A stretch of 63,839 nucleotides of DNA, filler included, from Octopus bimaculoides (GCF_001194135.2; 9 parts of 9 records of this genome joined end to end with filler, not necessarily neighbours in it), one strand, 5' to 3'. Counted from the whole stretch's first letter, positions 7,840-28,369 are shown. The notes: a model not told the origin generated them from the sequence alone. Program-made: numbers and translations.

Positions 7840-10800
7840 CATTCGTTCATACGTACATTCGTTCGTACGTACGATCGTTTGTTCGTTCCTTCCTTCCTAC
7901 GTACGTTCGTTCGGTCGTATGTACGTACGTTCATTCGTTTCTTCGTTCGTTCGGTCGTTCATACGTACGTACGTTCGGTCGTTCGTTCGTACGTACGTTC
8001 GCTCGTTCGTACGTAAGTACGTACGTACGTTTGTTCGTTCGGTCGTACGTTCGTTCGTTCGTTCATTCGTACGTACATAGTTCTTTCCTTATTTCCTGCC
8101 AACGTAATATGTACGTACGTACGTCTGTTCGTTCGTTCGATCGATCTTTCGTACGTACGTACGTACGTTTGTTCGGTCGTACCTACGTACGTACGTTCCT
8201 TCGTTCGTTCGGTCGTAGGTACGTACGTACGTACATACGTTCGTTTGTTCGTTCGTTCGTACGTACGTTCGTTCGTTCTTTCGTACGTACATGCGTTCGA
8301 TCGTTCGTTCGATCTTTCGTTTGTTCTATCCTTCTTTCGTTCGTTCGTTCGTTCGTTCTTTTGTTCGATCGTACGTACATACGTACGTTCGTTCATTCTT
8401 GCGTTCGTTCGTACGTACGTACGTTCGTTTGATCGTTCGTTCGTACGTACTTACGTACGTTAGTTCGTTCGTTCGCACATACGTACGTTCGTTCGTTCAT
8501 ACATTTCGTTCGTTCGCTTGTTCGTACGTAGGTACGTACGTCCGTCCGTTGGTTGTATGTAAGTACCTTCCTTCCTTCCTTCGTNNNNNNNNNNNNNNNN
8601 NNNNNNNNNNNNNNNNNNNNNNNNNNNNNNNNNNNNNNNNNNNNNNNNNNNNNNNNNNNNNNNNNNNNNNNNNNNNNNNNNNNNNNNNNNNNNNNNNNNN
8701 NNNNNNNNNNNNNNNNNNNNNNNNNNNNNNNNNNNNNNNNNNNNNNNNNNNNNNNNNNNNNNNNNNNNNNNNNNNNNNNNNNNNNNNNNNNNNNNNNNNN
8801 NNNNNNNNNNNNNNNNNNNNNNNNNNNNNNNNNNNNNNNNNNNNNNNNNNNNNNNNNNNNNNNNNNNNNNNNNNNNNNNNNNNNNNNNNNNNNNNNNNNN
8901 NNNNNNNNNNNNNNNNNNNNNNNNNNNNNNNNNNNNNNNNNNNNNNNNNNNNNNNNNNNNNNNNNNNNNNNNNNNNNNNNNNNNNNNNNNNNNNNNNNNN
9001 NNNNNNNNNNNNNNNNNNNNNNNNNNNNNNNNNNNNNNNNNNNNNNNNNNNNNNNNNNNNNNNNNNNNNNNNNNNNNNNNNNNNNNNNNNNNNNNNNNNN
9101 NNNNNNNNNNNNNNNNNNNNNNNNNNNNNNNNNNNNNNNNNNNNNNNNNNNNNNNNNNNNNNNNNNNNNNNNNNNNNNNNNNNNNNNNNNNNNNNNNNNN
9201 NNNNNNNNNNNNNNNNNNNNNNNNNNNNNNNNNNNNNNNNNNNNNNNNNNNNNNNNNNNNNNNNNNNNNNNNNNNNNNNNNNNNNNNNNNNNNNNNNNNN
9301 NNNNNNCTCGTACGTTCGGTACTTCGTTCGTTTCTTCGTTCTTTCATTCGAGCGTATGTACGTTTATTCGTACTTTCGGACGTACGTACGTAGGTACGTT
9401 CGTTCATTCGTTTGTTCGTTCGTTTGTACGTACATACGTTCGTTCGTTCGTTCTTTCACTCGTACTTATGTACGTACGTACATACGTACGTTCGTTCGTT
9501 ATTTCGTTCGTTCGTTCACTCCTTCGTACGTACGTACGTTCGTTCGTACGTACGGACGTATGTACGTACGTTTCTTCGTTTGTTCTTTCGCACGTACTTA
9601 CGTACGTACGTTCGTTCGATCGTTCGTTCTTACGTACGTTCGATCGTTCGTTCTTACGTACGTACGTTCGTTTGATCGTTCGTTCTTTTGTTCGTTATTT
9701 CGTTATTTCGTTCGGTCGTTGGTTCGTACGTACGTTTGTTCTTTCGTTCCATCGTTCGGTCGTACATACGTTCGTTCGTTCGGTCGGTCGTACGTATGTT
9801 CATTCGTTAGTTCGTTCCTACGTACGTACGTTTGCTCGTTTGTTCGTTCATTCGGTCGTACGTTCGTTCGATCGTTCGTTCTTACGTACGTCCGTACGTT
9901 CGTTGGTTCGTTCGTTCCTTCCTACGTACGTACGAACGTTCGTTCCTTCGTACGTACGTTCGTTCGTTCGTACATACTTACGTACGTTCGTTCGTACGTA
10001 CATGCATACGTTCGTTCGTTCAATCATTCGTTCGTACGTACGTTTGTCCGTTTGTTCTTTCTTTCGTTCGTTCCATCGTTCGGTCGTTCGTCCGTTCGAT
10101 CGTTCGCTCTTACGTACAAACGTACTTTCGATGGTTCGTTCGTTCCTACGGACGGACNNNNNNNNNNNNNNNNNNNNNNNNNNNNNNNNNNNNNNNNNNN
10201 NNNNNNNNNNNNNNNNNNNNNNNNNNNNNNNNNNNNNNNNNNNNNNNNNNNNNNNNNACGTACGTCCGTACGTTCGTTGGTTCGTTCGTTCCTTCCTACG
10301 TACGTACCTACGAACGAACGTTCGTTCCTTCGTACGTACGTTCGTTCGTACATACGTACGTTCGTCTGTACGTTCGTTCGTACGTACATGCATGCGTTCG
10401 TTCGTTCAATCATTCGTTCGTTCGATCGTTCGTACGTACGTTTGTTCTTTCTTTCGTTCGTTCCATCGTTCGTTCGTTGCTTCGTACGTTCGTTCATTCG
10501 TTCGTTAGTTCGGAGGTTCGTTCATACGTACGTACGTTCACTCGTTTGTACCCACGTACGTAAGTACGTTTGCTCGTTCGTTCGGTCGGTGGTACGTTCG
10601 GTCGTTCGTCCGTTCGTTCGTTCGTTCTTACGTACAAACGTGCTTTCGATGGTTCGTTCGTTCCTACGGACGGACGAACGTTTGTTTCTTCGTACGTACG
10701 TTCTTTTGTTTGTTCGTTTGTTCGTACGTACGTACGTTCGTTCTTTTGTTCATTCGTACGTACGGACGGACGAACGTTCGTTCCTTCGGTCGTTCGTTTG

Positions 10801-13800
10801 TTCGTTCGATCGTTCGTTAGTTCTTACATACTTACGTACGTTCGTTCCCACGTACGTACGTTCTTTCGGTCGTACCTACGTTCGTTCGTACGAACATGCG
10901 TACGTTCTTTCAATCGTTCGTTCGTTCTTTTGTACGTACATACGTTCGTTCTTACGTACGTTCGTTTGTTCGTTCGTTCGTACATACGTACGTTCGTTCG
11001 TACGTACGTTCTTTCGTACGTACGTTCGTTCGTTTGTTTTTTCTTTCTTTCGTTCCATCGTTCGTTCGTTGCTTCGTACGTACGTTCGTTCGGTCGTACG
11101 TACGTATGTTCATTCGTTTGTACGTTCGTTAGTTCGGAGGTTCGATCGTTCGTTGGTTGGTTCGTTCGTTCGTTCCTACGTACGTACGTACGAACGTTCG
11201 TTCCTGCGTTCGTTCGCTTGTTTGTTCGATCGTTCGTTCTTTCGTACATACTTACGTACGTTCGTTCGGTCGTTCGTACGTACGTACGTTCGGTCGTTCG
11301 TACGTACGTACGTTGGTTCGTTCGTACGTACATGCATACGTTCGTTCAATCTTTCGTTCGTTCTTTTTTTCGTTCGTACGTACGTTCGATCGTTTGTTCG
11401 TTGGTTCGTACGTACGTTCGTTCGTTCGTTCGTACGTACGTTTGTTCTTTTTTTCGTTCGTTCCATCGTTCGTTCATTGCTTCGTACGTACGTATGTTCG
11501 TTCGGTCGTTTGTCCGTTCGTTAGATTGGAGGTTCGTTCGTACGTACGTACGTACTTTCACTCGTTCGTACTTACGTGCGTACGTACCTTTGCTCGTTCG
11601 TTCGTTCGGTCGTACGTTCGGTCGTTCGTACGTTCGGTCGTTCGTTCGTTCGTTCGTTCGATGGTTCGTTCATACGTACATGCGAACGTTCGTTCTTACG
11701 TGCGTTCGTTCGTTGGTACGTTCGTTCGTTCTTTTATTCATTCGTTCGTTCGTACGCTCGTTTGTTCCTTCGTACGCTCGTTGGTCCTTCGTTCGTTCGT
11801 CCTTACGTACGTACGGACGTACGTTCGTTGATTTGGTCGTTAGTTCCTACGTACGGACGAACGTTCTTTCGTACATTCGTTCGTTCGTTTGTTCGTTCGA
11901 TCGTTCGTTCATTCGTACATACTTACGTACGTTCGTTCGGTCGATCGTACGTATGTACGTTCGTTCATTCGTACGTACATGCGTGCGTTCGTTCGTACAT
12001 GCGTGCGTTCGGTCGTACATCTGCTCGTTTGTTCGTACGTTCGTTTGTTCGTTCGTACGCACGTACGTTCGTTTCTTCGTACGTACGTTCGTTCAATCGT
12101 TCATTCGTTCGTTCTTACGTACGTTCGTTCGTTCGTACGTACGTACGTTCGATCAATCGTTCGTTCCGTCGTTCGATCGTTGCTTCGTACGTACGTTTGT
12201 TCGTGCGTTAGTTCGGAGGTTCGTTCGTACCTACGTACGTACGTTTGCTCGTTCGTTCTAACGTACGTTCATTCGTTCGTTCTTTCCTACATACGGACGA
12301 ACGTTCGTTTCTTCGTTCGGTTGTTCGTTCGTTCGCTCGTTCGATCGTTCGTACATACTTCCGTTCGGTCGCTCGTACGTACGTTCGTTCGTTCATACGT
12401 GCATGCCTACGTTCGTTCGTTCAATTATTCGTTTGTTCGTTCGTACATACGTTCGTTCGTACGTACATTTGTTCGTTCTTTTGTTCATTCGTTGGTTCGG
12501 TCGTTCGTTCATTCGTTTGTTCGATCTTTCGTCCGTTCTTTTGTTCATTCGTTCGTTCCTACGTTATTTCGTTCGTTCGTTCGATCTTTCGTTTGTACGT
12601 GCGTTTGTTCGTTTTTCCTTCGTTCGTTCCATCGTTAGTTCGTTCGTTAGTTTCTTCTTCCGTCCGTATGTTCGTTCGGTCGGTCGGTCGGTCGTACATC
12701 TGCTCGTTTGCTCGTTCGTTCGTACGTTCGTTCGTACGCACGTACGTTCGTTTGTTCGTACGTACGTTCGTTCAATCGTTCATTCGTTCGTTCTTACGTA
12801 CGATCGTAAGTTCAATCGTTCGTTATTTCGTTCCTTCATTCGTTCGATCGTTCGTTCGTTCATTCGTTCGATCTTTCCTTCGTTCTTTTGTTCATTCGTT
12901 CCTTCCTTCGTTATTTCGTTCGTACGTACGTTAGTTCGTTTATTCTTTCTTTCGTTCGATCGTACGTGCATTCGTTCGTAGCTTCGTACATACGTACGTT
13001 CATTCGTTTGTTTGTTCGTTAGTTCGCTCGTTCGTTAGTTCGCTCGTTCGTTCGTACGTACTTACGTTCGCACGTACGTACGTACGTTTGTTCATTCCTA
13101 CGTAAGTACGGACGGACGGACGAACGTTCGTTCCTTCGTTTGAACGTACGTTCGTTCGTACGTTCGTTCGTTCGTACGTTCGTTCGTTCTTTTCTTCGTT
13201 TGTTCGTTCGTACGTTCGTTCGATCGTTCGTACGTACGTACTTACATTTGTTAGATCGTTAGTTCGATCTTTCGTTTGTTCATTCGTTCTTTCCTTCGTT
13301 ATTTCGTTCGTACGTACGTTTTTTCGTTTGTTATTTCGTTAGTACCGACGTTCGTTCGTTGCTTAGAACGTACGTTGAACGGACGGACGGACGTTCATTC
13401 GTTTGTTCGTTCGTAAGTACGTACGTTCGTTCGTTCATTCGTACGTACATGCCTACGTTCGTTCGTTCGTAAGTACGTACGTACGTTCGTTCGTAAGTAC
13501 GTACGTACGTTCGTTCGTAAGTACGTACGTACGTTCGTTCGTAAGTACGTACGTACGTTCGTTCGTAAGTACGTACGTACGTTCGTTCGTTCATTCGTAC
13601 GTACATGCCTACGTTCGTTCTTTCAATCGTTCGTGAGTTCGTACGTACGTACGTTTGTTCGTTCGCTCGTACGTAGTTCGTTCAATAGTTCGTTCGTTCG
13701 TTCTTATGTACGTACGTACGGTCGTTGGTTCGTTCTTATGTACGTACGTACGGTCGTTGGTTCGTTCGTACGTACGGACAAACGAACGTTCGTTCCTTCG

Positions 13801-16800
13801 TTCGTCCGTACGATCATTCGTTCGTGCGTTCGTTCGTTCTTTTGTTCGTTCGTTCATTCATTCGTTTATACGTACATTCGTTCGTGCGTTCTTTTGTTCG
13901 TTCGATCCGTCGTTCCATCGTTCGTTCGTACGTTCGTTCGTACCTACGTTCGTTCTTACGCACGTTAATTCGTTCTTTGCTTCGTACGTACGTTCGATCG
14001 TTCTGTCTTACGTACGTACGTTCATTTGTTTGTTCGTTCGTTAGTTCGTTAGAACGATGGAACGAATGAAATAACGAAAGAATGAAAGAAAGAACGAACG
14101 AAAGATCGAACGAAAGAACGAACGTACGTACGAACGAATGAACGAACGAACGAGCAAAAGAACGAACGAACGAACGTACGTACGTCCGAACGAACGAAAT
14201 AACGAAGGAAGGAAACAACGAACTAACGTACGTACGAATGAACGAACGATTGAACGAACGTACGTACGTACGAACGAACGAGATAACGAAAGAATGAACG
14301 AACGAGCAAAAGAACGAACGATCGAACATACGAACGAACGAGCGAAGGAACGTACGTGCGAACGAATGTACGTACGAATGAACGTACGTACGAATGAACG
14401 AACGTACGTAAATACGAACGAACGAAGGCATGAACGAACGTACGTACGAAACAACGAACGAACGTACGGACATACGAACGTACGGACATACGAACGTACG
14501 TACGGACGAACGTACGTACGTTCGAACGAACGATAAAATGAACGAAATAACGAAGGAATAAAAGATCGGACGAAAGATCGAATGAACGAACGATTGAACG
14601 AACGTACGCACGAACGAACGATGGAACGAAAGAAATAACGAATGAACGAAAGAACGAACAAAGATCGAATGAAAGAACGAACGATCAAACGAACGTACGT
14701 ACGTACGAACATACGAATGAATGAACGTACGTACGAACGAACGTACGTACATTCGTTCGTACGTACGTTCGTTCCTTCATTCGTTCGTACGTACGTTCGT
14801 TTGTATGTTTTTTCTTTCTTTCATTTGTTCGTTCGTTTGTTTGTACGTACGTTCGTTCGTTCCTACGTACGATCTTTCGTTGTTTCGATCTTTGTTCGCT
14901 CTTTCGTTCTTTCTTTCGTTCCTTCGTTATTTCGTTCGTTCCATCGTTCGTTCGTACGAACGTTCGTTCAATCGTTCGTAAGTACGTTCGTTCGTACGTA
15001 CATGCGTACGTTCGTTTGTTCAATCGTTCGTTCGTTCGTACGATCGCTCGTTCTTACGTACGGACGACCGTTCGTTCCTTCGTTAGTACGTACGTTTGTT
15101 CGTTATTTCGTTCGTTCGTTGTTCTTTTCGTTTGTTCGTTCCTTCATTCGTTCGTACTTACGTTCGTTCGTATGTTCGTTCGATCTTTCGTTCGTTCGTA
15201 CGTACGTTCGTTCGATCGTTCTTTCTTTCGATCTTTTTTCGTTCTTTCGTTCATTCTTTCGTTCCTTCGTTATTTCTTTCGTTCCATCGTTCGTTCGTAC
15301 GTACGTACGTTCCTACGTTCGTTTGTACGTACGTACGTTCGATCGTTCTTTCTTTCGATCTTTGTTCGTACTTTCGTTCATTCTTTGGTTGCTTCGTTAT
15401 TTCGTTCGTTCCATCGTTCGTTCGGACGTACGTACGTACGTTCGTTCGGACGTACGTACGTTCGTTCGTACGTACGTTAGTTCGTACGTACGTACGTTCG
15501 TTCGTACGTACGTTCGTACGTTCGTTAGTTCGTACGTAAGTTTGTTCGTACGTACGTTCGTTTTGTGCTCGTTCGTTCGTTCATTCGGTCGTACGTACGT
15601 TCGTTCGTACGTACGTTAGTTCGTACGTTCGTTAGTTCGTACGTAAGTTTGTTCGTACGTACGTTCGTTTTGTGCTCGTTCGTTCGTTCATTCGTTCGTA
15701 CGTACGTTCGATCTTTCGTTCGTTATTTCATTCATTCTTTCGTTATTTCGTTCGTTCGAACGTCCGAGCGTTCGTTCGTACGTACGTACGTTCGTTCGTA
15801 CGTACGTCCCTACGTACGTTCGTTCGTACGTTCGTTCGTTGTTTCGCACGTACGTACGTTCGTATGTTTCTTCTTTCTTTCGTTCGTCTGTTCGTTCTTG
15901 TTTCTTTCGATCTTTGTTCGCTCTTTCGTTCATTCTTTCGTTCCTTCGTCATTTCGTTCGTTCCATCGTTCGTTCGTACGTCCGTACGTACGATCGTTCG
16001 TACGTACGAACGTTTGTTCGTAAGTACGTACGTACGTTCAATCGATCGTTCGTTCTTTCTTTCGAACTTTGTTCGTTCTTTCGTTCCTTCGCTATTTCTT
16101 TCATTCGATCGTTCGTTCGTACGTACGTACTTTCGTTTTACGTACGTTCGTTCAATCGTTCGTTCGTTAGTTCGTACGTATGTACGTTCATTCGATCGTT
16201 CGTTATTTCGTTCGATCTTTCGTTCGTTCTTTCCTTCCTTCTTTCGTTCTCTCGTTATTTCGTTTGTCCGTACGTACGTTCTTTCGTAGTACGTTCGTTC
16301 GTACGTACGTTCATTCGTTCGTATGTTCGTTCGTTCTTTCGTTCGTTCGATCGTTCGTTCTTTCTTTCGATCTTTGTTCTTTCTTTCGTTCCTTCGTTAT
16401 TTCTTTCGTTCCATCGTTCGTTCGTACGTACGTACGTTCGTTCATTCGTACGTACGTACGTTCGTTCGATCATTCGTTCGTTCTTTCTTTCGATCTTTGA
16501 TCGTTCTTTCGTTCCTTCGTTATTTCTATCGTTCCATCGTTCGTTTGTACGTTCGTACGTTCGTTCATTTCATCGTTCGTTCGAATGTACGTACGTTCGT
16601 CCCTACGTACGTTCGTTCGTACTTTCGTTTGTAAGTACGTTCGTTCGTTGTTTCGTACGTGCGTTCGTTCGTTCGTTCATGCCTTCGTTCGTTCATTCGT
16701 TCGTCCGTACTTACGTACGTTCGTTCGTTCGTTCGTACGTACGTTCGTTCGTACGTACGTTCCTTCGTTCTTTTGCTCGTTCGTTCGTTCATTCATTCAT

Positions 16801-19800
16801 TCTTTCGTTATTTCGTTCGTTTCATCGTTCGTTCGTTCGTACGTTCGTTCATACGTACGTTCGTTCGTTCGTATGTACGTATGTTAGTTCGTTCTTTCCT
16901 TCCTTCGTTATTTCGTTCGTTCCCTCGTTCGTTCAGACGTACGTAGGTTCGTATGTTCGTTCGTTCGTTCATTCGTTCGTACGTACGTACGTTCGTTCGA
17001 TCGTTCGTTCGTTCGTAGGTACATGCGTCCGTTCGTTTGTTCAATTGTTTGTTCGTTCTTTCATTCGTTCCTACGTACGTTCGTTCGTACGTACGTTCAT
17101 TCATTCGTATGTTCGCTCGTTCGTTCGTACGTACGTTCGTTATTTCTTTCGTTCCATCGTTCGTTCGTACGTACGTTCGTTCAATCGTTCGTTCGTACGT
17201 TCATTCGATCGTTCGTTCGTTCTTTCGTCCGATCTTTCGTTCCTTCGTTATTTCGTTCATTTCATCGTACGTTCGTCCGTACGTTCGTTCGTTGTTTCGT
17301 ACGTACGTTCGTTCGTTCATGCCTTCGTTCGTTCGTACGTACGTTCGTTCGNNNNNNNNNNNNNNNNNNNNNNNNNNNNNNNNNNNNNNNNNNNNNNNNN
17401 NNNNNNNNNNNNNNNNNNNNNNNNNNNNNNNNNNNNNNNNNNNNNNNNNNNNNNNNNNNNNNNNNNNNNNNNNNNNNNNNNNNNNNNNNNNNNNNNNNNN
17501 NNNNNNNNNNNNNNNNNNNNNNNNNNNNNNNNNNNNNNNNNNNNNNNNNNNNNNNNNNNNNNNNNNNNNNNNNNNNNNNNNNNNNNNNNNNNNNNNNNNN
17601 NNNNNNNNNNNNNNNNNNNNNNNNNNNNNNNNNNNNNNNNNNNNNNNNNNNNNNNNNNNNNNNNNNNNNNNNNNNNNNNNNNNNNNNNNNNNNNNNNNNN
17701 NNNNNNNNNNNNNNNNNNNNNNNNNNNNNNNNNNNNNNNNNNNNNNNNNNNNNNNNNNNNNNNNNNNNNNNNNNNNNNNNNNNNNNNNNNNNNNNNNNNN
17801 NNNNNNNNNNNNNNNNNNNNNNNNNNNNNNNNNNNNNNNNNNNNNNNNNNNNNNNNNNNNNNNNNNNNNNNNNNNNNNNNNNNNNNNNNNNNNNNNNNNN
17901 NNNNNNNNNNNNNNNNNNNNNNNNNNNNNNNNNNNNNNNNNNNNNNNNNNNNNNNNNNNNNNNNNNNNNNNNNNNNNNNNNNNNNNNNNNNNNNNNNNNN
18001 NNNNNNNNNNNNNNNNNNNNNNNNNNNNNNNNNNNNNNNNNNNNNNNNNNNNNNNNNNNNNNNNNNNNNNNNNNNNNNNNNNNNNNNNNNNNNNNNNNNN
18101 NNNNNNNNNNNNNNNNNNNNNNNNNNNNNNNNNNNNNNNNNNNNNNNNNNNNNNNNNNNNNNNNNNNNNNNNNNNNNNNNNNNNNNNNNNNNNNNNNNNN
18201 NNNNNNNNNNNNNNNNNNNNNNNNNNNNNNNNNNNNNNNNNNNNNNNNNNNNNNNNNNNNNNNNNNNNNNNNNNNNNNNNNNNNNNNNNNNNNNNNNNNN
18301 ATCGTTCGTTCGTACGTACGTTCGTTCAATCGTTCGTTCGTACGTTCATTCGATCGTTCGTTCGTTCTTTCGTCCGATCTTTCGTTCCTTCGTTATTTCG
18401 TTCATTTCATCGTACGTTCGTCCGTACGTTCGTTCGTTGTTTCGTACGTACGTTCGTTCGTTCATGCCTTCGTTCGTTCGTACGTACGTTCGTTCGTTCG
18501 TTCGGTCGTTCCTTCGTACGTACGTACGTTAGTTCGTTGTTTCCTTCTTTCGTTATTTCGTTCGTTCGGACGTACGTACTTTCGTTCGTAGGAACGAACG
18601 AAAAAAACAACGGACGAACGAAATAACGAACAAACGTACGTACTAACGAAGGAACGAACGGTCGTCCGTACGTAAGAACGAGCTATCGTACGAACGAACG
18701 AACGAACAATTGAACAAACGAACGGATGCATGTACGTACGAACGTACGTACTTACGAAAGAACGTACGAACGAACGATGGAACGAACGAAATGACGAAGG
18801 AACGAAAGAATGAACGAAAGAGCGAACAAGGATCGAAAGAAACAAAGAACGATCGAACGTACATACGTACAAACAAACGAACAGACGAACGAAAGAAAGA
18901 AGAAACATACGAACGAACGTACGTACGAACGAAAGTACGTACGAATGAACGTACGTACGAACGATTGAACGAACGTACGTACGTGCGAAACAACGAACGA
19001 ACGTACGTAGGGACGTACGTACGAATGAACGATGGAACGAACGAAAGAATGAATGAAAGAAAGAACGAACGATCGAACGTACGTACGTACGTACGAACGA
19101 ATGAACGAACGAACGAGCAAAAGAACGAACGAACGTACGTACGAACTAATGAACGTACGAACGAACGTACGTACGAACGTACGAACGAAATAACGAAGCA
19201 ACCAAAGAATGAACGAAAGTACAAACAAAGATCGAAAGAAAGAACGATCGAACGTACGTACGAACGCACGCACGAACGTGCGTACGTACGAACGAACAAT
19301 GGAACGAAAGAAATAACGAATAAACGAAAGAAAGAACGATCGAACGTACGTACGAACGAACATACGAACGAACGAACGTAAGTACGAACGAATGAAGGAA
19401 CGAACAAACGAAAAGAACAACGGACGAAATAACGAACGGTCGTCCGTACGTAAGAACGAGCGATCGTACGAACGAACGTACGAACGAACGAACGATTGAA
19501 CAAACGAATGTACGTACATACAAACGAACGTACGTGCGAACGACGGTACGTGAAAACGAACGTACGTACGAACGATTGAACGAACGAACGAGCAAAAGAA
19601 CGAACGTACGTACAAACGAAAGTACGTACGAACGAACGAACGAACATACGTACGTATAAACGAACGATGGAGCGAACGAAATAACGAAGGAACGAAAGAA
19701 TGAACGAAGGAGCGAACAAAGATCGAAAGAAACAAAGAAAGATCGAAAGTACGTACGTACGAACGAACGTAAGTACAAACAAACGAACGGACGAACGAAA

Positions 19801-22800
19801 GAAAGAAGAAACATACGAACGAACGTACGTACGAATGAACGCACGTACGAACGATTGAACGAAAGTACGTACGTACGTAAGAATGAACGAACGAAGGCAT
19901 GAACAAACAAACGAAAGTACGTACGTGCGAAACAACGAACGAACGTTCGTACATTCGAACGAACGATCGAACGTACGAACGAACGTACGTACGAACTAAC
20001 GTACGTGCGTCCGAACGAACGATGGAACGAACGAAATAACGAAGGAAGGAAAGAATGAACGAAAAATCGAACGAAAGAACGGACTAACGTACGTACAAAC
20101 GAACGAACGTACGTACGTACGAACGAACGATGGAACGAACGAAATAACGAAGCAACCAAAGAATGAACGAAAGAACGAAAAAACATCGAAAGAAAGAACG
20201 ATCGAACGAACGTACGTACGAACGAACGAAAGAACGAACGAAATAACGAACAAACGTGCGTACTAACGAAAGAACGAACGGTCGTCCGTACGTAAGAACG
20301 AGCGATCGTACGAACGAACGTACGTACGAACGAAATAACGAAGGAACGAAAGAATGAACGAAAGAGCGAACAAAGATCGAAAGAAAGAACGAACGTACGT
20401 ACAAACAAACGAACGAACGAACTAAAGAAAGAAAAAACATGAGAACGAATGTACGTACGAACGAATGAAGGAATGAACGTACGTACGAACGAACGAACGT
20501 ACGTACGAACGATCGTACGTACGTACGTTCGAACGAACGAACGATGGAACGAATGAAATAACGAAAGAACGAACGAAAGAACGATCGAACGTACGTACGT
20601 ACGAACGAATGAACGAACGAACGAGCAAAAGAACGAACGAAAGTACGTACGTCCGAACTAACGAGGGAAGGAACGAAATAACGAAGGAAGGAAACAACGA
20701 ACTAACGCACGTGCGTACGAACGATTGAACGAACGTACGTACGTACGAACGAACGTACGAACGAACGAACGATCGTACGTAGGGACTTACGTACGAACGA
20801 ACGTTCGGACGTTCGAACGAACGAAAGAACGAAAGAATGAATGAAAGAACGAATGAAAGATCGAACGAAAGAACGAATGATCGAACGTACGTACGTACGA
20901 ACGAACGAGCAAAAGAACGAACGTACGTACGAACTAACGAACGTACGTACGAACGAACGATGCAACGAACGAAATAACGAAGCAGCCAAAGAATGAACGA
21001 AAGTACGAACAAAGATCGAAAGAACGATCGAACGTACGTACGAACGTAAGCACGTACGTACAAACGAACGTACGTACGTACGAACGAACGATGGAACGAA
21101 AGAAATAACGAAGGAACGAAAGAACGAAAAAAGATCGAAAGAAAGAACGATCGAACGAAAGAACGAACGAACGAACGTAAGTACGAACGATTGAAGGAAC
21201 GAACAACGGACGAACGAACAAACGTACGTACTAACGAAGGAACGAAAGAGCGAACAAAGATCGAAATAAAGAACGAAAGATCGCACGTAGGAACGAACGA
21301 ACGTACGTACAAACAAACGAACGAACGAATAAAAGAAAGAAAAAACATACAAACGAACGTACGTACGAACGAATGAAGGAACGTACGTACGAACGAATGT
21401 ACGTACGAATGAACGTGCGTATGAACGATTGAACGAACCTACGTACGTACATAAGAACGAAGGAAGGCATGAACGAGCGTACGTACGAAAGAACGAACGT
21501 ACGTAAGTTCGAACGAACGATGGAACGAATGAAATAACGAAGGAACGTAAGAATGAATGAAAGAACGAACGAAAGAAAGAACGAACGATCGAACGAACGT
21601 GCGTACGTACGAACGAACGAGCAAAAGAACGAACGAACTAACGTACGTACGTCCGAACGAACGAGGGAACGAACGAAATAACGAAGGAAGGAAAGATCGA
21701 ACTAACGTACGTACATACGAACGAACGAACGATTGAACGAACGTACGTACGAACGAACGAAAGAATGAACGAACGAACGAGCAAAAGAACGAAGGAACGT
21801 ACGTACGAACGAACGAACGAACGAAGGCATGAACGAACGAACGTACGTACGAAACAACGAACGTACGTACAAACGAACGTACGTACAAACGAACGTACGT
21901 ACGGACGAACGTACGTACGTTCGAACGAACGATGAAATGAAAGAAATAACGAAGGAACGAAAGATCGGACGAAAGAACGAACGAATGATCGAATGAACGT
22001 ACGTACGAACATACGAACGAACGTACGTACGTACGAATGAACGAACGAGTGAACGAAAGTACGTACGTACGAACGAACGATGGAACGAAAGAAATGACGA
22101 AGGAACGAAAGAACGNNNNNNNNNNCGGACGAACGTACGTACGTTCGAACGAACGATGAAATGAAAGAAATAACGAAGGAACGAAAGATCGGACGAAAGA
22201 ACGAACGAATGATCGAATGAACGTACGTACGAACATACGAACGAACGTACGTACGTACGAATGAACGAACGAGTGAACGAAAGTACGTACGTACGAACGA
22301 ACGATGGAACGAAAGAAATGACGAAGGAACGAAAGAACGAACAAAGATCGAAAGAAAGAACGAACGAACGTACGAACGAACGAAAGAACGAACGAACATA
22401 CGAATGAATGAACGTACGTACTACGAACGAACGAAATAACGAGAGAACGAAAGAAGGAAGGAAAGAACGAACGATCGAATGAACGTACGTACGTACGAAC
22501 GAACGAACGATTGAACGAACGTACGTACGTACGTACGAACGAACGATGGAATGAAAGAAATAACGAAGGAACGAAAGAACGAACAAAGATCGAAAGAAAG
22601 AACGATTGAACGTACGTACGTACGAACGAACGAACGAAAGAACGAACGAACTTACGAATGAATGAACGAACGAACGTACGTACGAACGAATGAAGGAACG
22701 AACAAACGAAAAAAACAACGGAAGAACGAAATAACGAACAAACGTACGTAATAACGAAGGAACGAACGGTCGCCCGTACGAAAGAACGAGCGATCGAACA

Positions 22801-25498
22801 AACGAACGAACAATTGAACAAACGAACGTACGTACGTACTTACGAACGAACGAACGTACGTATGTACGAACGATCATACGTACGAACGAACGATATGACG
22901 AAGGAACGAAAGAATGAACGAAAGAGCGAACAAAGATCGAAAGAAACAAAAAAGATCGAAAGTACTACGTACCAACGAACGTACGTACAAACAAACGAAC
23001 GAAAGAAAGAAAGAAGAAACATACGAACGAACGTACGTACGTCCGAACGAACGAGGGAACGAACGAAATAACGAAGGAAGGAAAGAACGAACTAACGTAC
23101 GAACAAACGAACGATTGAACGAACGAAATAACGAAAGAATGAATGAATGAACGAACGAACGAGCAAAAGAACGAAGGAACGTACGTACGAACGAACGTAC
23201 GAACGAATGAACGTACGAACGAACGTACGTACGAATGAACGTACGTATGAACGTACGTACGAACGTACGTAAGTACGAATGAACGATCGAAGGCATGAAC
23301 GAACGAACGTACGTACAAACGAACGTACGGACGAACGTACGTACGTTCGAACGAACGATGAAATGAAAGAAATAACGAAGGAACGAAAGATCGGACGAAA
23401 GAACGAACGAATGATCGAATGAACGTACGTACGAACATACGGACGAACGTACGTACGTACGTACGAACGAACGATGGAACGATAGAAATAACGAAGGAAC
23501 GAAAGAACGAACAAAGATCGAAAGAAAGAACGAACGAATGATCGAACGAACGTACGTACGTACGAATGAACGAACGTACGAACGAACGATGGAACGAAAG
23601 AAATGACGAAGGAACGAAAGAACGAACAAACATCGAAAGAAAGAACGAACGATCGAACGAACGTACGTACGAACGAACGATTGAACGAACGTACGTACGT
23701 ACGAATGAACGAACGAACGAAAGTACGTACGTACGAACGTACGATGGAACGAAAGAAATGACGAAGGAACGAAAGAACGAACAAACGAAAAAAAAGAACG
23801 GACGAACGAACAAACGTACGTACTAACGAAGGAACGAACGGTCGTCCGTACGTAAGAACGAGCGATCGTACGAACGATCGAACGATCGAACGAACAATTG
23901 AACAAACGAACGTACGCATGTACGTACGTACGAACGAACGTACGTACGTACTTACGAACGAACGAACGTTCGTACGTACGAACGAACGTACGTATGTACG
24001 AACGATCGTACGTACGAACGTACGCACGTACGAACGAACGAAATGACGAAGGAACGAAAGAATGAACGAAAGAGCGAACAAAGATCGAAAGAAATAAAGA
24101 AAGATCGAAAGTACGTACGTACCAACGAACGAACGTACGTACAAACAAACGAACGGACGAACGAAAGAAAGAAAGAAGAAACATACGAACGAAGGTACGT
24201 ACGAATGAACGTACGTACGAACGATTGAACGAACGTACGTACGTAAGAATGAACGAACGAAGGCATGAACAAACGAACGAACGTACGTACGTGCGAAACA
24301 ACGAACGAACGTACGTACGTTCGAAAGAACGATGGAACGAACGAAATAACGAAAGAACGAAAGAATGAATGAAAGAAAGAACGAAAGATCGAACGAACGT
24401 ACGTACGTACGAACGAATGAACGAACGAACGAGCAAAAGAACGTACGAACGTACGTAGGAACGAACGTACGTAGGAACTAACGAACGTACGAATGATCGT
24501 ACGTACGAACTAACTTACGTACGAACGAACATACGTGCCTCCGAACGAACGATGGAGCGAACGAAATAACGAAGGAAGGAAAGAATGAACGAAAGATCGA
24601 ACGAAAGAACGGACTAACGTACCTACAAACGAACGATATTTCGTGCCTTCGTATATACGTACGTTCGGTCGTTCCTTCGTTCGTTCATTCGTACGATTGT
24701 TCGTTCGTACGTACGTTTGTCCTTTCGTTCGTTCGTTCGTTCGTTCGTACGTACGTACTTACGTACGTTCGTTCTTTCTTTCGTTAGTACATACGTACGT
24801 CCATTCGTTCGTTCGTTTGTTCGTTCGTACGTACGTACGTACTTTCTTTCTTTCGTACGTTCGTATGTACGTTCGTTCGTACGGTCGTTCATTCGTTTGT
24901 TCTTACGAACGTACGTACGTACGGACGTACGTTCGTTCGTTCGTTCGTTCTTTCATTCGTTCTTTCGTTCGTATGTACGTACGCACTAACGTACTTGAGT
25001 ACGTTCGTTCCTTCGTCCATACGTACTTACGTACAAACGTTCATTCGTTTGTTCGTTCGTCCGTTCGTATGTATGTAAGTTGGTTTGATATTTTGTGTCT
25101 ACGTACATACGAACGAACGAACGAATGCATGCACGTACGTACGTGCGAACGAACGTACGAACGAACGAACGGACGGACGGACGTACGTAGGAAAGAACGA
25201 ACGAACAAACATACGTGCATACGTATTTATGTAAGTACTTATGAACGAACGAACGAACGAACGAACGAACGAACAAAAGAAAGAACGAACGAACGAACAA
25301 ACATACGTACCTACGTACGTAAAAACGACCGAAGAAACGAACGAACGAAAGCACGTACGTATGTAGGTACGAACGAACTAACGACCAAACCAACGAACGA
25401 ACGATCGAACGTACGAACGAACGAATGAACGATCAAACGAAGGAACGAACGTACTTACGTACGAACGAACGTACTTACGTACGAGCGAATGAACGATT

Positions 25499-25529
<31 letters not shown>

Positions 25530-25660
25530 CGAACGAATGTACGTACGTACGTATGAACGACCGAACGAACGAACGAACGAACGAACGAATGAACGAACGA
25601 ACGTACGTACGTACGAACAAACGAACGACGAAGGAACGTACGTACATACGTCCGAACGTA
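7840..25660. repeat. Giant cryptic tetranucleotide satellite (GTTC/GTAC units, inverted domains GAAC/GTAC), CpG at most unit junctions
   Basis: Parses in strict 4-nt register, e.g. 7841: attc gttc atac gtac attc gttc gtac gtac gatc gttt gttc gttc cttc. Continues with internal N gaps to 25660. The left end abuts an artificial linker, so the true length may be greater. Confidence 0.97.
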
Positions 25661-26272
25661 TGAGAAAGAGTGAGAAATAGAGTGAGCAAGGAATGGGGCG
25701 AAAGATAAGACAGACAGACAGACAGACAGACAGATAGATAGATAGATAGATAACTTTCTTTTATTAGCCACACAGGGCTGCACACATAGATAGGTAAGAA
25801 ACATTGAAAGGGGACATAACCAAGTATCACCTCCAATTAGTTACAGAATGTGTTGAAAGAGTTACTTCCCTGGAAACATAGACTCGTTTTCTGCGTTCTG
25901 TCAACGTTCTTTCTTTCTTTGCTCTTTTCTCTTACTCANNNNNNNNNNNNNNNNNNNNNNNNNNNNNNNNNNNNNNNNNNNNNNNNNNNNNNNNNNNNNN
26001 NNNNNNNNNNNNNNNNNNNNNNNNNNNNNNNNNNNNNNNNNNNNNNNNNNNNNNNNNNNNNNNNNNNNNNNNNNNNNNNNNNNNNNNNNNNNNNNNNNNN
26101 NNNNNNNNNNNNNNNNNNNNNNNNNNNNNNNNNNNNNNNNNNNNNNNNNNNNNNNNNNNNNNNNNNNNNNNNNNNNNNNNNNNNNNNNNNNNNNNNNNNN
26201 NNNNNNNNNNNNNNNNNNNNNNNNNNNNNNNNNNNNNNNNNNNNNNNNNNNNNNNNNNNNNNNNNNNNNNNN

Positions 26273-26610
26273 AACAACAACAATAAAACCATAGACACCA
26301 CCACCACCGCTACCACCACCGCTACCACCACTACCACCACCACCACCACTACCACCACCACCGCTACCACCACCACTACCACCACCACTACCGCTACCAC
26401 CACCACCAACCTCATTACTACAATCACCAACAACAACAATAACAGTAGCAACAACTGAAACATCAACAACTACTAACTACTACTGCTACTACTACCACCA
26501 CCACCACCAACAACACTACTACTGCTACTGCTACTACTACTACTAGCAACATCATCATAAATCTCACCACCACCACCACCAATAACAACAGCAGCAACAG
26601 CAGCAAGAAG
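26273..26610. repeat. Compound (ACC)/(ACT)/(AAC) trinucleotide repeat
   Basis: Direct reading; source of the poly-T and poly-V ORFs. Confidence 0.9.
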
Positions 26611-26943
26611 ACTGTGCAGTCAGCCGCACCGCCGCCGTCACCCGCCACAAGCATCACACCTCTAAGATCAATAACCAATCAATTGCGCAAAAAGCAATTA
26701 AACGCCAGCCATCATTATTGTATCGATCTGTTACATCTTGATTGATTTGTGGAATGTATGTAACAGGATGGCGTGTGTACGATTTATGATGCAGTGCACA
26801 CTTTGGACGCACACACGCAGCACACACATTAAGATATGTGCGTGTGTACATTTATGTACACATGCTTACACATACATGTTTACTTGTGCGTGTATGTATA
26901 TATACATGTATATATATATATATACATATATATACATATATAC

Positions 26944-27006
<63 letters not shown>

Positions 27007-27892
27007 CATATATATACATTTGTGTGTGTGTGCATGTTTACGTCACCGTAAATTAGCGTTTCAACAAAACAGACCGACAGAATAAGAACCAGTCTTGCAA
27101 AGACAAAGAAAGCAAAACAAATAAAAGTTACTGGGTCGATTCATCCGACTAAAATTTCTCCAAGGTGGTGCCCCAGCATGGTCGCAGTCTCATNNNNNNN
27201 NNNNNNNNNNNNNNNNNNNNNNNNNNNNNNNNNNNNNNNNNNNNNNNNNNNNNNNNNNNNNNNNNNNNNNNNNNNNNNNNNNNNNNNNNNNNNNNNNNNN
27301 NNNNNNNNNNNNNNNNNNNNNNNNNNNNNNNNNNNNNNNNNNNNNNNNNNNNNNNNNNNNNNNNNNNNNNNNNNNNNNNNNNNNNNNNNNNNNNNNNNNN
27401 NNNNNNNNNNNNNNNNNNNNNNNNNNNNNNNNNNNNNNNNNNNNNNNNNNNNNNNNNNNNNNNNNNNNNNNNNNNNNNNNNNNNNNNNNNNNNNNNNNNN
27501 NNNNNNNNNNNNNNNNNNNNNNNNNNNNNNNNNNNNNNNNNNNNNNNNNNNNNNNNNNNNNNNNNNNNNNNNNNNNNNNNNNNNNNNNNNNNNNNNNNNN
27601 NNNNNNNNNNNNNNNNNNNNNNNNNNNNNNNNNNNNNNNNNNNNNNNNNNNNNNNNNNNNNNNNNNNNNNNNNNNNNNNNNNNNNNNNNNNNNNNNNNNN
27701 NNNNNNNNNNNNNNNNNNNNNNNNNNNNNNNNNNNNNNNNNNNNNNNNNNNNNNNNNNNNNNNNNNNNNNNNNNNNNNNNNNNNNNNNNNNNNNNNNNNN
27801 NNNNNNNNNNNNNNNNNNNNNNNNNNNNNNNNNNNNNNNNNNNNNNNNNNNNNNNNNNNNNNNNNNNNNNNNNNNNNNNNNNNNNNNNNNNN

Positions 27893-27926
<34 letters not shown>

Positions 27927-28173
27927 GTTTTAGGGAAAAGAACCAAGGTTCATGAACTCATCGATGAAAATCCACTGTCATATAGAAAAATTAATTTTAT
28001 ATATATATATATATATATACACACACGCTAATACACGACTTATAATCCCCAATCCTGTTCATACAACGAATGGGGCATAACTAGCCGGTATACAGCACTT
28101 ACTCGGTATTCCCTGTATCCTCCTGGGTTTAGTTAAATCCAATACCCTTCTCAACCTTATATATGTATATATA

Positions 28174-28337
28174 GGCGCAGGCGTGACTGTATGGTACGAA
28201 GCTTGCTTCTCAACCACATGGTTCTGGGTTCAGTCCTTCTGGGTGGCACCTTAGGCAAGTTTCTTCTACTATAGCCCTGGGCCAACCAAAAGCCTTGTGA
28301 GCAGGTTCAGTAGACAGAAACTGAAAAAAAACCCGTC

Positions 28338-28340
<3 letters not shown>
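28174..28340 (+). mobile_element. tRNA-derived SINE family B
   Basis: GGCGCAGGCGTGACTGTATGGTA (A-box-like), GGTTCTGGGTTCAGTCC (B-box-like), GGCACCTTAGGCAAGT..AAAGCCTTGTGAG..GAAACTGAAA. Confidence 0.85.

Positions 28341-28369
<29 letters not shown>

What the first reader, a model, noticed from the sequence alone, without database searches (positions are those of the whole stretch)
7840..25660. ~18-kb CpG-saturated GTWC satellite written in a strict 4-nt alphabet
Seen: the array is neither a pure microsatellite nor a fixed monomer. It is a string of GTTC and GTAC units plus mostly single-substitution variants (ATTC, GTTT, CTTC, GGTC, GATC, ATAC, GTAT) that stays in 4-nt register over long stretches, with a CpG at most unit junctions, inside an otherwise AT-rich sequence. 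It is packed with ACGT, CGTACG and TACGTA palindromes. Inference: this could be an undescribed satellite class acting as a chromatin or methylation domain, or a high-density protein-binding platform (possibly pericentromeric or subtelomeric). Its function is unknown.
Basis: partly seen in the sequence, partly recalled or inferred. Interest (0 to 1): 0.75.

Follow-up and report, generated by a model that had tools for sequence, protein, structure and literature searches.

The report
Octopus GTTC/GTAC compound tetranucleotide satellite array
This is a real but probably ordinary piece of non-coding repetitive DNA from an octopus genome: about 16 kb of 4-letter GTTC and GTAC units kept in step, most likely grown by copying slips and local duplications, with its many CpG sites surviving because octopuses barely methylate such DNA.

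Summary
Places 7840-25660 contain 16,040 read bases, almost all of them 4-nt units. GTTC makes up 37%, GTAC 20%, and 94% of units lie within one substitution of GTWC. Of the inter-CpG distances, 98.2% are multiples of 4. CpG observed/expected is about 3.3.

- The most common variant unit is TTTC.
- The array flips strand five times.
- It contains scattered direct and inverted segmental copies (83-97% identical against a 72-74% background), a perfect 24-bp x5.5 local repeat and a loose 127-bp periodic stretch.
- Two of the four gaps are flanked by identical 196-bp and 214-bp sequences, so continuity and total length are not established.

SINE copies in the right flank match Octopus vulgaris, so the source is an octopod.

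My best reading is a non-coding compound (AACG)n/(ACGT)n microsatellite that grew to satellite size by slippage, unequal exchange and inversion. The CpGs are kept because octopus intergenic repeats are almost unmethylated. I found no evidence of coding, structured RNA or telomere association.

I rate this a new member of a known kind, of modest interest.

The parts
7840..8584 (+). Array contig 1, T-rich (GTTC/GTAC) strand on +. The left end is cut by the edge of the piece.
   Evidence: 128 CpG in 745 bp, CpG o/e 3.24.
9307..10157 (+). Array contig 2, entirely in a single 4-nt phase.
   Evidence: all 147 CpGs are in the same phase; 9884-10088 is an 87% copy of 10258-10478.
10258..14057 (+). Array domain in + orientation. 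It contains a perfect 24-bp x5.5 local repeat at 13460-13590.
14058..14746 (-). Inverted 0.69-kb array segment (GAAC/GTAC on +).
   Evidence: the AT skew changes sign; junctions located.
14611..14880 (.). Imperfect palindrome (fold-back junction) centred at 14746|14747 inside a GTAC-GTAC pair.
   Evidence: arms of 61 bp at >=85% complementarity; single-strand DNA fold -90.3 kcal/mol against -60.4 for shuffles, z -8.2, with a stem spanning about 14611-14880.
14747..17351 (+). Array domain in + orientation with a loose 127-bp periodic sub-array (15106-17200). A signature block ...CGATCTTTGTTCG..TTCGTTATTTCGTTCGTTCCATCGTTCGTTCGTACG recurs at irregular spacing.
   Evidence: TRF period 127, 16.5 copies, 70% matches; positions of the signature.
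17156..17351 (+). 196 bp identical to 18301-18496, on either side of gap 17352-18300.
18301..18590 (+). Array, + orientation, first part of contig 4.
18591..22115 (-). Array domain in - orientation. It carries inverted copies (83-93%) of segments of 14747-17351 and direct copies spaced about 0.9-1.5 kb apart.
21902..22339 (-). Two identical 214-bp sequences (21902-22115 and 22126-22339) flanking the 10-N gap.
22126..24636 (-). Array domain in - orientation, continued.
24637..25095 (+). Short + oriented array segment.
25096..25660 (-). Last - oriented array segment. The right boundary with non-array sequence lies inside one contig.
   Evidence: contig 22126-25938 runs from the array into the flank without N.

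Best explanation
This is a non-coding, microsatellite-derived satellite array at an intergenic locus of an octopod genome.

It is built from two CpG-bearing tetranucleotide motifs, GTTC and GTAC, which belong to simple-repeat classes (AACG)n and (ACGT)n. The two motifs differ by a single T/A change at unit position 3.

Proposed history:
1. Replication slippage adds and removes whole units. This is why the 4-nt register survives over hundreds to about 1,500 bp.
2. Point substitutions create the variant units.
3. Unequal exchange and template switching copy blocks of 24 bp to about 550 bp, in both direct and inverted orientation. This gives the strand flips, one fold-back palindrome and a soft higher-order pattern with no fixed period.

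The CpGs persist because octopus germline DNA outside gene bodies is very sparsely methylated, so CpG decays hardly faster than other sites.

The array most likely has no sequence-specific function. It behaves as neutral or selfish tandem DNA and is possibly heterochromatic.

What is shown: composition, register, strand flips, segmental copies, unit-multiple indels, weak CpG hypermutability and octopod origin. What is inferred: the slippage and exchange mechanisms, the lack of methylation at this locus and the lack of function.
For: - Unit and register statistics.
- The two unit types are clustered rather than randomly mixed. P(A-type | A-type) = 0.59 against P(A-type | T-type) = 0.17. Runs average about 2 units for GTAC-type and about 4.7 for GTTC-type.
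- Among indels between paralogous segments, 187 of 313 are multiples of 4 nt.
- Segmental copies of 120-547 bp are 83-97% identical, both direct and inverted. Any two in-register pieces share a background identity of 72-74%.
- A perfect 24-bp x5.5 repeat at 13460-13590 shows recent local amplification.
- There is no dominant long period in the autocorrelation. TRF finds only a 70%-matching 127-bp period.
- Transitions at CpG sites are only 2.3 times those at other sites between paralogs: 5.5% against 2.4% per site.
- In O. bimaculoides, under 10% of CpGs are methylated and repeats are nearly unmethylated (PMC9476566).
- The source is an octopod. A SINE in the flank is 83.5% identical over 194 bp to Octopus vulgaris chromosome OX597836.1, and its translation hits three O. 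vulgaris proteins.
- Not coding. All three frames of the T-rich strand are open purely through composition. The only protein matches are generic FVRS/FIHS low-complexity sequences.
- No Rfam family reaches its gathering score.
- Absent from 185,579 prokaryote genomes and from IMG/VR. Only short tracts occur in metagenomes.
Against: - Contiguity and length rest on a gapped short-read-style scaffold, and two gaps are flanked by exact duplicates.
- No reads could be laid on the array, so copy number, genome-wide abundance and methylation at this locus are unknown.
- The paralog substitution analysis is confounded. In low-complexity sequence, aligned units need not be orthologous.
- The same methylome paper notes that RepeatMasker 'satellites' are relatively more methylated than other repeats, so 'unmethylated' is not guaranteed for this array.
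- Lack of function is a default assumption, not a result.
Confidence: 0.68

Rival explanations
1. Assembly artefact. The array as drawn is a concatenation or mis-scaffolding of shorter GTTC/GTAC tracts from several loci or haplotypes, and some strand flips are chimeric joins. Some tract at this locus is real, but not a contiguous block of about 16 kb.
For: There are four N gaps inside the array. Exact 196-bp and 214-bp duplicates sit on both sides of two gaps. There are five orientation switches. 20% of 31-mers are not unique within the array. The array runs off the left edge of the piece.
Against: One N-free contig covers 7.1 kb of array (10258-17351), and another runs 3.5 kb from the array into unique flank. 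92.5% of 51-mers are unique within the array. Paralogs are 83-97% identical, not 100%. Four of the five flips do not sit on strand-symmetric (GTAC)n runs, which is where a de Bruijn graph could switch strand. Exact duplicates at contig ends are also what a true repeat with two or more copies produces.
Confidence: 0.17
2. Functional chromatin domain. The array is, or belongs to, a centromeric, pericentromeric or otherwise heterochromatic satellite, or a methylated CpG-dense block. It would act as a high-density platform for a sequence-specific or methyl-CpG-binding protein.
For: The array is large, has a very high CpG density of 16.7 per 100 bp and carries dense ACGT, CGTACG and TACGTA palindromes. 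It has a fold-back structure. In O. bimaculoides, repeats classed as satellites are relatively more methylated than other repeats (PMC9476566). No octopus centromere repeat turned up in the papers searched.
Against: There is no positional, abundance, ChIP or methylation evidence. CpG transitions are only 2.3 times non-CpG transitions, which argues against heavy germline methylation. There is no fixed monomer or regular higher-order repeat of the kind typical of homogenised centromeric satellites. The array borders ordinary SINE and microsatellite-rich sequence.
Confidence: 0.1
3. Small-RNA or hairpin-RNA source. Opposed array domains (+ 14747-18590 against - 18591-24636, and the palindrome at 14746) would give double-stranded RNA if transcribed, feeding an siRNA or piRNA pathway.
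For: There are inverted segmental copies at 83-93% identity. The fold-back at 14746 is strong, with z -8.2. Many sub-threshold miRNA-like hairpin hits lie at palindromic spots.
Against: No Rfam hit reaches its gathering score, and the hits are what any palindromic low-complexity DNA gives. No transcription data could be obtained. No promoter or known cluster context was found.
Confidence: 0.04
4. Protein-coding low-complexity gene encoding V-R-S-F / V-R-T-Y repeats.
For: Long ORFs exist, up to 563 aa without X. One example is 10570-12261.
Against: All three frames of the T-rich strand are open at once, and the other strand is partly open too. This follows from units that lack stop triplets. 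The ORFs change strand with the array flips. There is no exact record of the ORF. The homologue search returned only generic low-complexity hits, at most 52% identity over 29% of the query, and none carried the VRTY component.
Confidence: 0.01

Closest known systems
Compound or imperfect microsatellites of classes (AACG)n and (ACGT)n, annotated by RepeatMasker/TRF as Simple_repeat
   Same: The unit length is 4 nt and the two core motifs are the same. Copies lie head to tail in register and indels come in whole units. TRF reports the whole region as period 4 with 71-77% matches. A mixed GTTC/GTAC tract of about 400 bp occurs in metagenome contig L008.
   Different: The scale differs: at least 15.6 kb against the usual tens to hundreds of bp. 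The array also has segmental copies, five strand inversions and sub-arrays with 24-bp and 127-bp periods. Cephalopods are reported to be rich in microsatellites, tetranucleotides included (PMC3397955; PMC12564688). No paper found describes this motif pair.
Classical satellite DNA with higher-order repeats, such as short-unit simple satellites of Drosophila or alpha-satellite HORs (from general knowledge)
   Same: It is a long non-coding tandem array. Local amplification of multi-unit blocks and inverted blocks are both present, and a heterochromatic location is plausible.
   Different: There is no fixed monomer or regular HOR period. Unit-level identity is only about 72%. Genome-wide abundance and chromosomal position are unknown. 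CpG density is far above that of typical AT-rich satellites.
CpG islands
   Same: CpG observed/expected is far above 0.6 (3.2-3.4) over many kb.
   Different: G+C is 44.6%, below the usual threshold of at least 50%. The high CpG is a by-product of the repeat unit. No gene or promoter was detected. GpC is depleted (o/e 0.1-0.2), unlike true CpG islands.
(TTCC)n/(TTCT)n-type NTTC arrays in cuttlefish (Acanthosepion pharaonis locus L013) and FVRS/FIHS low-complexity 'proteins' in a sea anemone and in metagenomes
   Same: These are T-rich NTTC tetranucleotide tracts whose translation gives S-F-x-x repeats. They were the best protein-level hits.
   Different: They lack the GTAC component and the CpG saturation. 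L013 has 0 GTACGTAC and 4 GTTCGTTC. The resemblance is one of composition only, with no homology.

Membership tests
Microsatellite (simple sequence repeat), compound/imperfect | Tandem head-to-tail units of 1-6 nt | tested here: met
   TRF finds period 4 across all blocks. 98.2% of inter-CpG distances are multiples of 4.
Microsatellite (simple sequence repeat), compound/imperfect | Length variation by whole units (slippage signature) | tested here: met
   187 of 313 indels between paralogous segments are multiples of 4 nt. Only 49 register breaks occur in 16 kb.
Microsatellite (simple sequence repeat), compound/imperfect | Short tract, typically under 1 kb | tested here: not met
   There are 16,040 read bases of array, and the longest N-free contig is 7.1 kb. 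It is of microsatellite origin but satellite scale.
Satellite DNA | Long tandem array (kb to Mb) of non-coding repeats | tested here: met
   The caveat is that contiguity across gaps is unproven.
Satellite DNA | Defined monomer and/or regular higher-order repeat | tested here: inconclusive
   There is no dominant period beyond 4 nt. The patterns found are a local 24-bp x5.5 perfect repeat, a 127-bp x16.5 period at 70% matches, and segmental copies with irregular spacing.
Satellite DNA | High genomic abundance, or clustering in heterochromatin, centromere or subtelomere | not testable with these tools
No eukaryotic genome collection could be searched by DNA.
CpG island | G+C >= 50% with CpG o/e >= 0.6 over at least 200 bp | tested here: not met
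   G+C is 44.6% and CpG o/e is 3.2-3.4. The G+C criterion fails.
Telomeric or subtelomeric repeat | Adjacent (TTAGGG)n tracts | tested here: not met
   There is no TTAGGG dimer anywhere in 7840-28369 and only one isolated hexamer. The piece is only 20 kb long, so this is weak evidence against a subtelomeric position.
Centromeric satellite | Association with CENP-A or the kinetochore, and presence at primary constrictions | not testable with these tools
   No ChIP, FISH or chromosome-scale coordinates were available.
Protein-coding repeat gene | A single preferred reading frame and strand, with homologues sharing the repeat | tested here: not met
   All frames are open at once. Only generic low-complexity hits were found. 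There is no exact record.
Known structured RNA (Rfam) | Score at or above the family's gathering threshold | tested here: not met
   All 105 hits are below gathering. The best is 53 bits against a threshold of 90, and it lies in the flanking TA-rich microsatellite. No tRNA was found.

The most novel reading that the evidence does not exclude
The GTTC/GTAC array could be one locus of an abundant, octopod-specific, CpG-saturated satellite that marks a defined chromosomal compartment, for example centromeres or a methylated heterochromatin block. It would be the 'satellite' fraction reported as exceptionally methylated in the O. bimaculoides methylome. The palindromic ACGT/CGTACG cores would serve as a dense binding or methylation platform.
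Probability: 0.1. Interest if true: 0.6.

Novelty: new member of a known kind. Interest (0 to 1): 0.27.

Why it matters
If the ordinary reading is right, the value is practical. First, it flags a scaffold region whose gaps and length should not be trusted. Second, it gives a clean example of how two CpG-bearing tetranucleotide microsatellites can grow into a 16-kb, strand-flipping array in a genome with sparse methylation.

It would matter more if the repeat proved abundant and localised. No octopus centromere or heterochromatin repeat turned up in the papers I could search. A repeat with 17 CpG per 100 bp would also be an unusually sensitive natural reporter of where cephalopod DNA methylation does and does not act.

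Tried and rejected
No reads could be laid, so abundance, contiguity, transcription and methylation are untested. I did not try to get around this.
- Coding reading rejected. The ORFs are compositional. The exact look-up of the 563-aa ORF found nothing. The homologue search found only FVRS/FIHS low-complexity proteins.
- Structured RNA or miRNA rejected. All Rfam hits were below gathering, and there was no tRNA.
- Two protein searches with other reading frames of the flank SINE found nothing. A third frame, run through the HMMER representative search, gave the Octopus vulgaris hits.
- Regular higher-order repeat not found.
- I tested the idea that all strand flips are palindromic fold-backs at (GTAC)n runs. 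Only the 14746 junction is.
- Prokaryotic or viral origin rejected. The 24-mer has 0 hits in 185,579 genomes and in IMG/VR.
- The cuttlefish locus behind the Acanthosepion hit has (TTCC)/(TTCT) arrays but no GTAC, so it is not related.
- Literature searches for octopus satellites, centromeres and AACG/ACGT tetranucleotides found no description of this repeat. The 2015 octopus genome paper was not held under the id I tried.

Full report
**What was examined.** The usable piece is 7840-28369. It consists of seven N-free blocks: 7840-8584, 9307-10157, 10258-17351, 18301-22115, 22126-25938, 26273-27193 and 27893-28369. The finding covers 7840-25660.

**Gaps first.**
- Gap 17352-18300: the 196 bases before it are identical to the 196 bases after it.
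- Gap 22116-22125: the same holds for 214 bases.
- These duplicates are what you see when contigs break at an exact repeat, or when contig ends overlap and the scaffolder did not merge them. Either way, the nominal gap lengths and the total length are unreliable.
- Gaps 8585-9306 and 10158-10257 show no suffix-prefix overlap. Sequence after the second of these is an 86-87% copy of sequence about 370 bp before it.
- At the nominal gap lengths, the 4-nt phase is continuous only across the 10-N gap. Because gap sizes are estimates, this says nothing either way.
- The array holds 16,040 read bases, or 15.6 kb without the two exact duplicates. It runs off the left edge of the piece, so its true extent is unknown.

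- Cutting the sequence at CpG gives 2,673 intervals. 98.2% of them are multiples of 4 nt and 66% are exactly 4. There are only 49 register breaks.
- In-register runs reach 1,542 and 1,522 bp, and some continue straight through strand flips.
- Of 3,854 in-register units, GTTC is 36.9% and GTAC 20.1%. Next come TTTC 8.1%, ATTC 4.1%, GTTT 3.6%, CTTC 3.2%, GTTA 2.6% and GATC 2.5%. 93.6% lie within one mismatch of GTWC.
- CpG occupies 67% of unit junctions, at 16.7 per 100 bp. CpG o/e is 3.2-3.4, GpC o/e is 0.1-0.2 and the flank has CpG o/e 0.66.
- ACGT, CGTACG and TACGTA occur 50.6, 38.5 and 25.9 times per kb. CGCG, GCGC, CCGG and GGCC are essentially absent.
- The pattern CGTWCGTWCGTWCG is found 553 times against 2.4 expected.

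- *Strand flips.* The array changes strand five times: + to 14057, - to 14746, + to 18590, - to 24636, + to 25095 and - to 25660. Only the 14746 junction is a palindrome. It is centred in a GTAC|GTAC pair. As single-stranded DNA, 14600-14899 folds at -90.3 kcal/mol against -60.4 for shuffles, z -8.2. The other four junctions are plain and do not lie on strand-symmetric (GTAC)n runs.
- *Non-random unit order.* A-type units (xxAx) follow A-type units with probability 0.59, against 0.17 after T-type units. This gives short GTAC blocks of about 2 units between longer GTTC blocks of about 4.7 units.
- *Soft higher-order layer.* Segments of 120-547 bp recur in direct and inverted orientation at 83-97% identity, against a background of 72-74% for any two in-register pieces. 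A signature block containing TTCGTTATTTC...TTCCATCGTTCG recurs at least 25 times at irregular spacing. TRF finds a loose 127-bp period over 15106-17200. A perfect 24-bp x5.5 repeat lies at 13460-13590. Autocorrelation shows no dominant long period.

**Source organism.** The right flank contains microsatellites and two SINE fragments.
- The translation of 28213-28344 (minus strand) hits three hypothetical proteins of Octopus vulgaris, with library-wide E-values of 1.5e-5 to 5.7e-5 and 71% identity over 28 residues.
- At DNA level, 28170-28363 is 83.5% identical over 194 bp to an O. vulgaris chromosome (OX597836.1), and 27040-27103 matches the same element.
- The piece therefore comes from an octopod. 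The species was not determined.

**What it is not.**
- It is not coding. All three frames of the T-rich strand are open at once because the units lack stop triplets. The longest clean ORF has no exact record. Its best 'homologues' are generic FVRS/FIHS low-complexity proteins from a sea anemone, a cuttlefish and metagenomes, and none carries the VRTY part that GTAC encodes.
- It is not a known RNA. No Rfam family reaches its gathering score, and the hits are hairpins that any palindromic repeat gives. No tRNA was found.
- It is not telomere-associated within this piece.
- It is not a CpG island by the usual definition. G+C is 44.6% and GpC is depleted.
- It is not prokaryotic or viral. The 24-mer AACGAACGTACGTACGAACGAACG has no hit in 185,579 genomes or in IMG/VR.
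- In JGI/ENA metagenomes the 24-mer occurs in 12 contigs, and only as short tracts. The best is a mixed, in-register GTTC/GTAC tract of about 400 bp in L008. The motif pair therefore exists elsewhere at microsatellite scale.

**How it most likely arose and persists.**
- GTTC and GTAC differ by one T/A change, and both create a CpG at each junction with the next G-initial unit.
- Between paralogous segments, 187 of 313 indels are multiples of 4 nt. This is the signature of slippage, and it explains the preserved register.
- Block copies in both orientations, the perfect 24-bp repeat and the fold-back point to unequal exchange and template switching on top of slippage. This step is inferred.
- CpG sites show transitions at 5.5% per site against 2.4% at other sites, an excess of only 2.3-fold. 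That is far from the roughly tenfold excess known for heavily methylated vertebrate DNA (general knowledge). The caveat is that aligned units in such sequence are not always orthologous.
- Published O. bimaculoides methylomes report under 10% of CpGs methylated. The methylated sites are concentrated in gene bodies, and repeats are nearly unmethylated, although RepeatMasker 'satellites' are relatively higher (PMC9476566). CpG saturation therefore needs no functional explanation in this lineage.

**Is the array an assembly artefact?**
- For: the gaps, the exact duplicates at two gaps, the flips, and 20% non-unique 31-mers.
- Against: a 7.1-kb N-free contig made entirely of array, a contig that runs from the array into unique flank, 92.5% unique 51-mers, paralogs that differ by 3-17%, and flips that do not sit on strand-symmetric k-mers.
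- I put about 17% on the array being substantially an artefact.

**Comparison with what is known.**
- The nearest category is a compound imperfect microsatellite of classes (AACG)n and (ACGT)n that has reached satellite scale.
- It meets the unit-size and slippage criteria for a microsatellite but not the size criterion.
- It meets the long non-coding tandem array criterion for satellite DNA. It lacks a defined monomer, and its abundance and location are unknown.
- Cephalopods are reported as microsatellite-rich, tetranucleotides included (PMC3397955; PMC12564688).
- A recent detailed repeat annotation of O. vulgaris lumps simple repeats together and describes no satellite (PMC13282606).
- None of my literature searches found this repeat described.

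**Verdict.** The description is confirmed and extended. The claim of an 'undescribed satellite class with chromatin function' is not supported, though it is not excluded. I rate it a new member of a known kind. Interest is modest (0.27), mainly because of the unusual CpG density and the unresolved question of octopus centromeric and heterochromatic repeats.

Noticed in passing
window 28170-28363 and 27040-27103: There are two fragments of an octopus SINE. The first is 83.5% identical over 194 bp to Octopus vulgaris chromosome OX597836.1 (L014 3233-3424). Its minus-strand translation matches O. vulgaris hypothetical proteins CAI9739595.1, CAI9725719.1 and CAI9733340.1, which look like SINE-derived gene models.
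   Followed up: yes
window 25708-25762: A compound (AGAC)n(AGAT)n microsatellite lies about 50 bp beyond the right end of the array, so the neighbourhood is rich in other tetranucleotide repeats.
   Followed up: no
window 26273-26610: This is about 340 bp of imperfect triplet repeats, (CAC)n, (ACT)n and (AAC)n, with GCT interruptions. It reads as poly-Thr/Asn on + or Gly/Val-rich on -. Whether it is an exon or just a microsatellite was not tested. It abuts gap 25939-26272.
   Followed up: no
window 26893-27019, 27893-27920, 28339-28369: These are (TATATATACA)n, (CA)14 and (TA)15 microsatellites. The best Rfam 'mir-297/mir-466' hits fall in the first and are sub-threshold chance matches.
   Followed up: partly
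window 13460-13590: This is a perfect tandem repeat of a 24-bp, six-unit block (GTAA GTAC GTAC GTAC GTTC GTTC), 5.5 copies with no mismatch. It looks like a very recent local amplification inside an otherwise 72%-identical array.
   Followed up: yes
window 24086-25627 and 13911-14656: The 4-nt CpG register runs unbroken through strand-flip junctions at 24637, 25095 and 14057. The inversions are therefore in phase with the unit lattice.
   Followed up: partly
L008 270-690 (OFHQ01036762.1, marine metagenome contig): A tract of about 400 bp mixes GTTC and GTAC in register, inside otherwise unique 40% G+C sequence of an unidentified organism. The same motif pair therefore occurs elsewhere at microsatellite scale.
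   Followed up: partly
window 8080-8110 and 25060-25095: These are short non-repeat islands inside the array (for example ...ttatttcctgccaacgtaatatg... and ...gtaagttggtttgatattttgtgtc...). The second sits at a strand-flip junction. Their origin is unknown.
   Followed up: no
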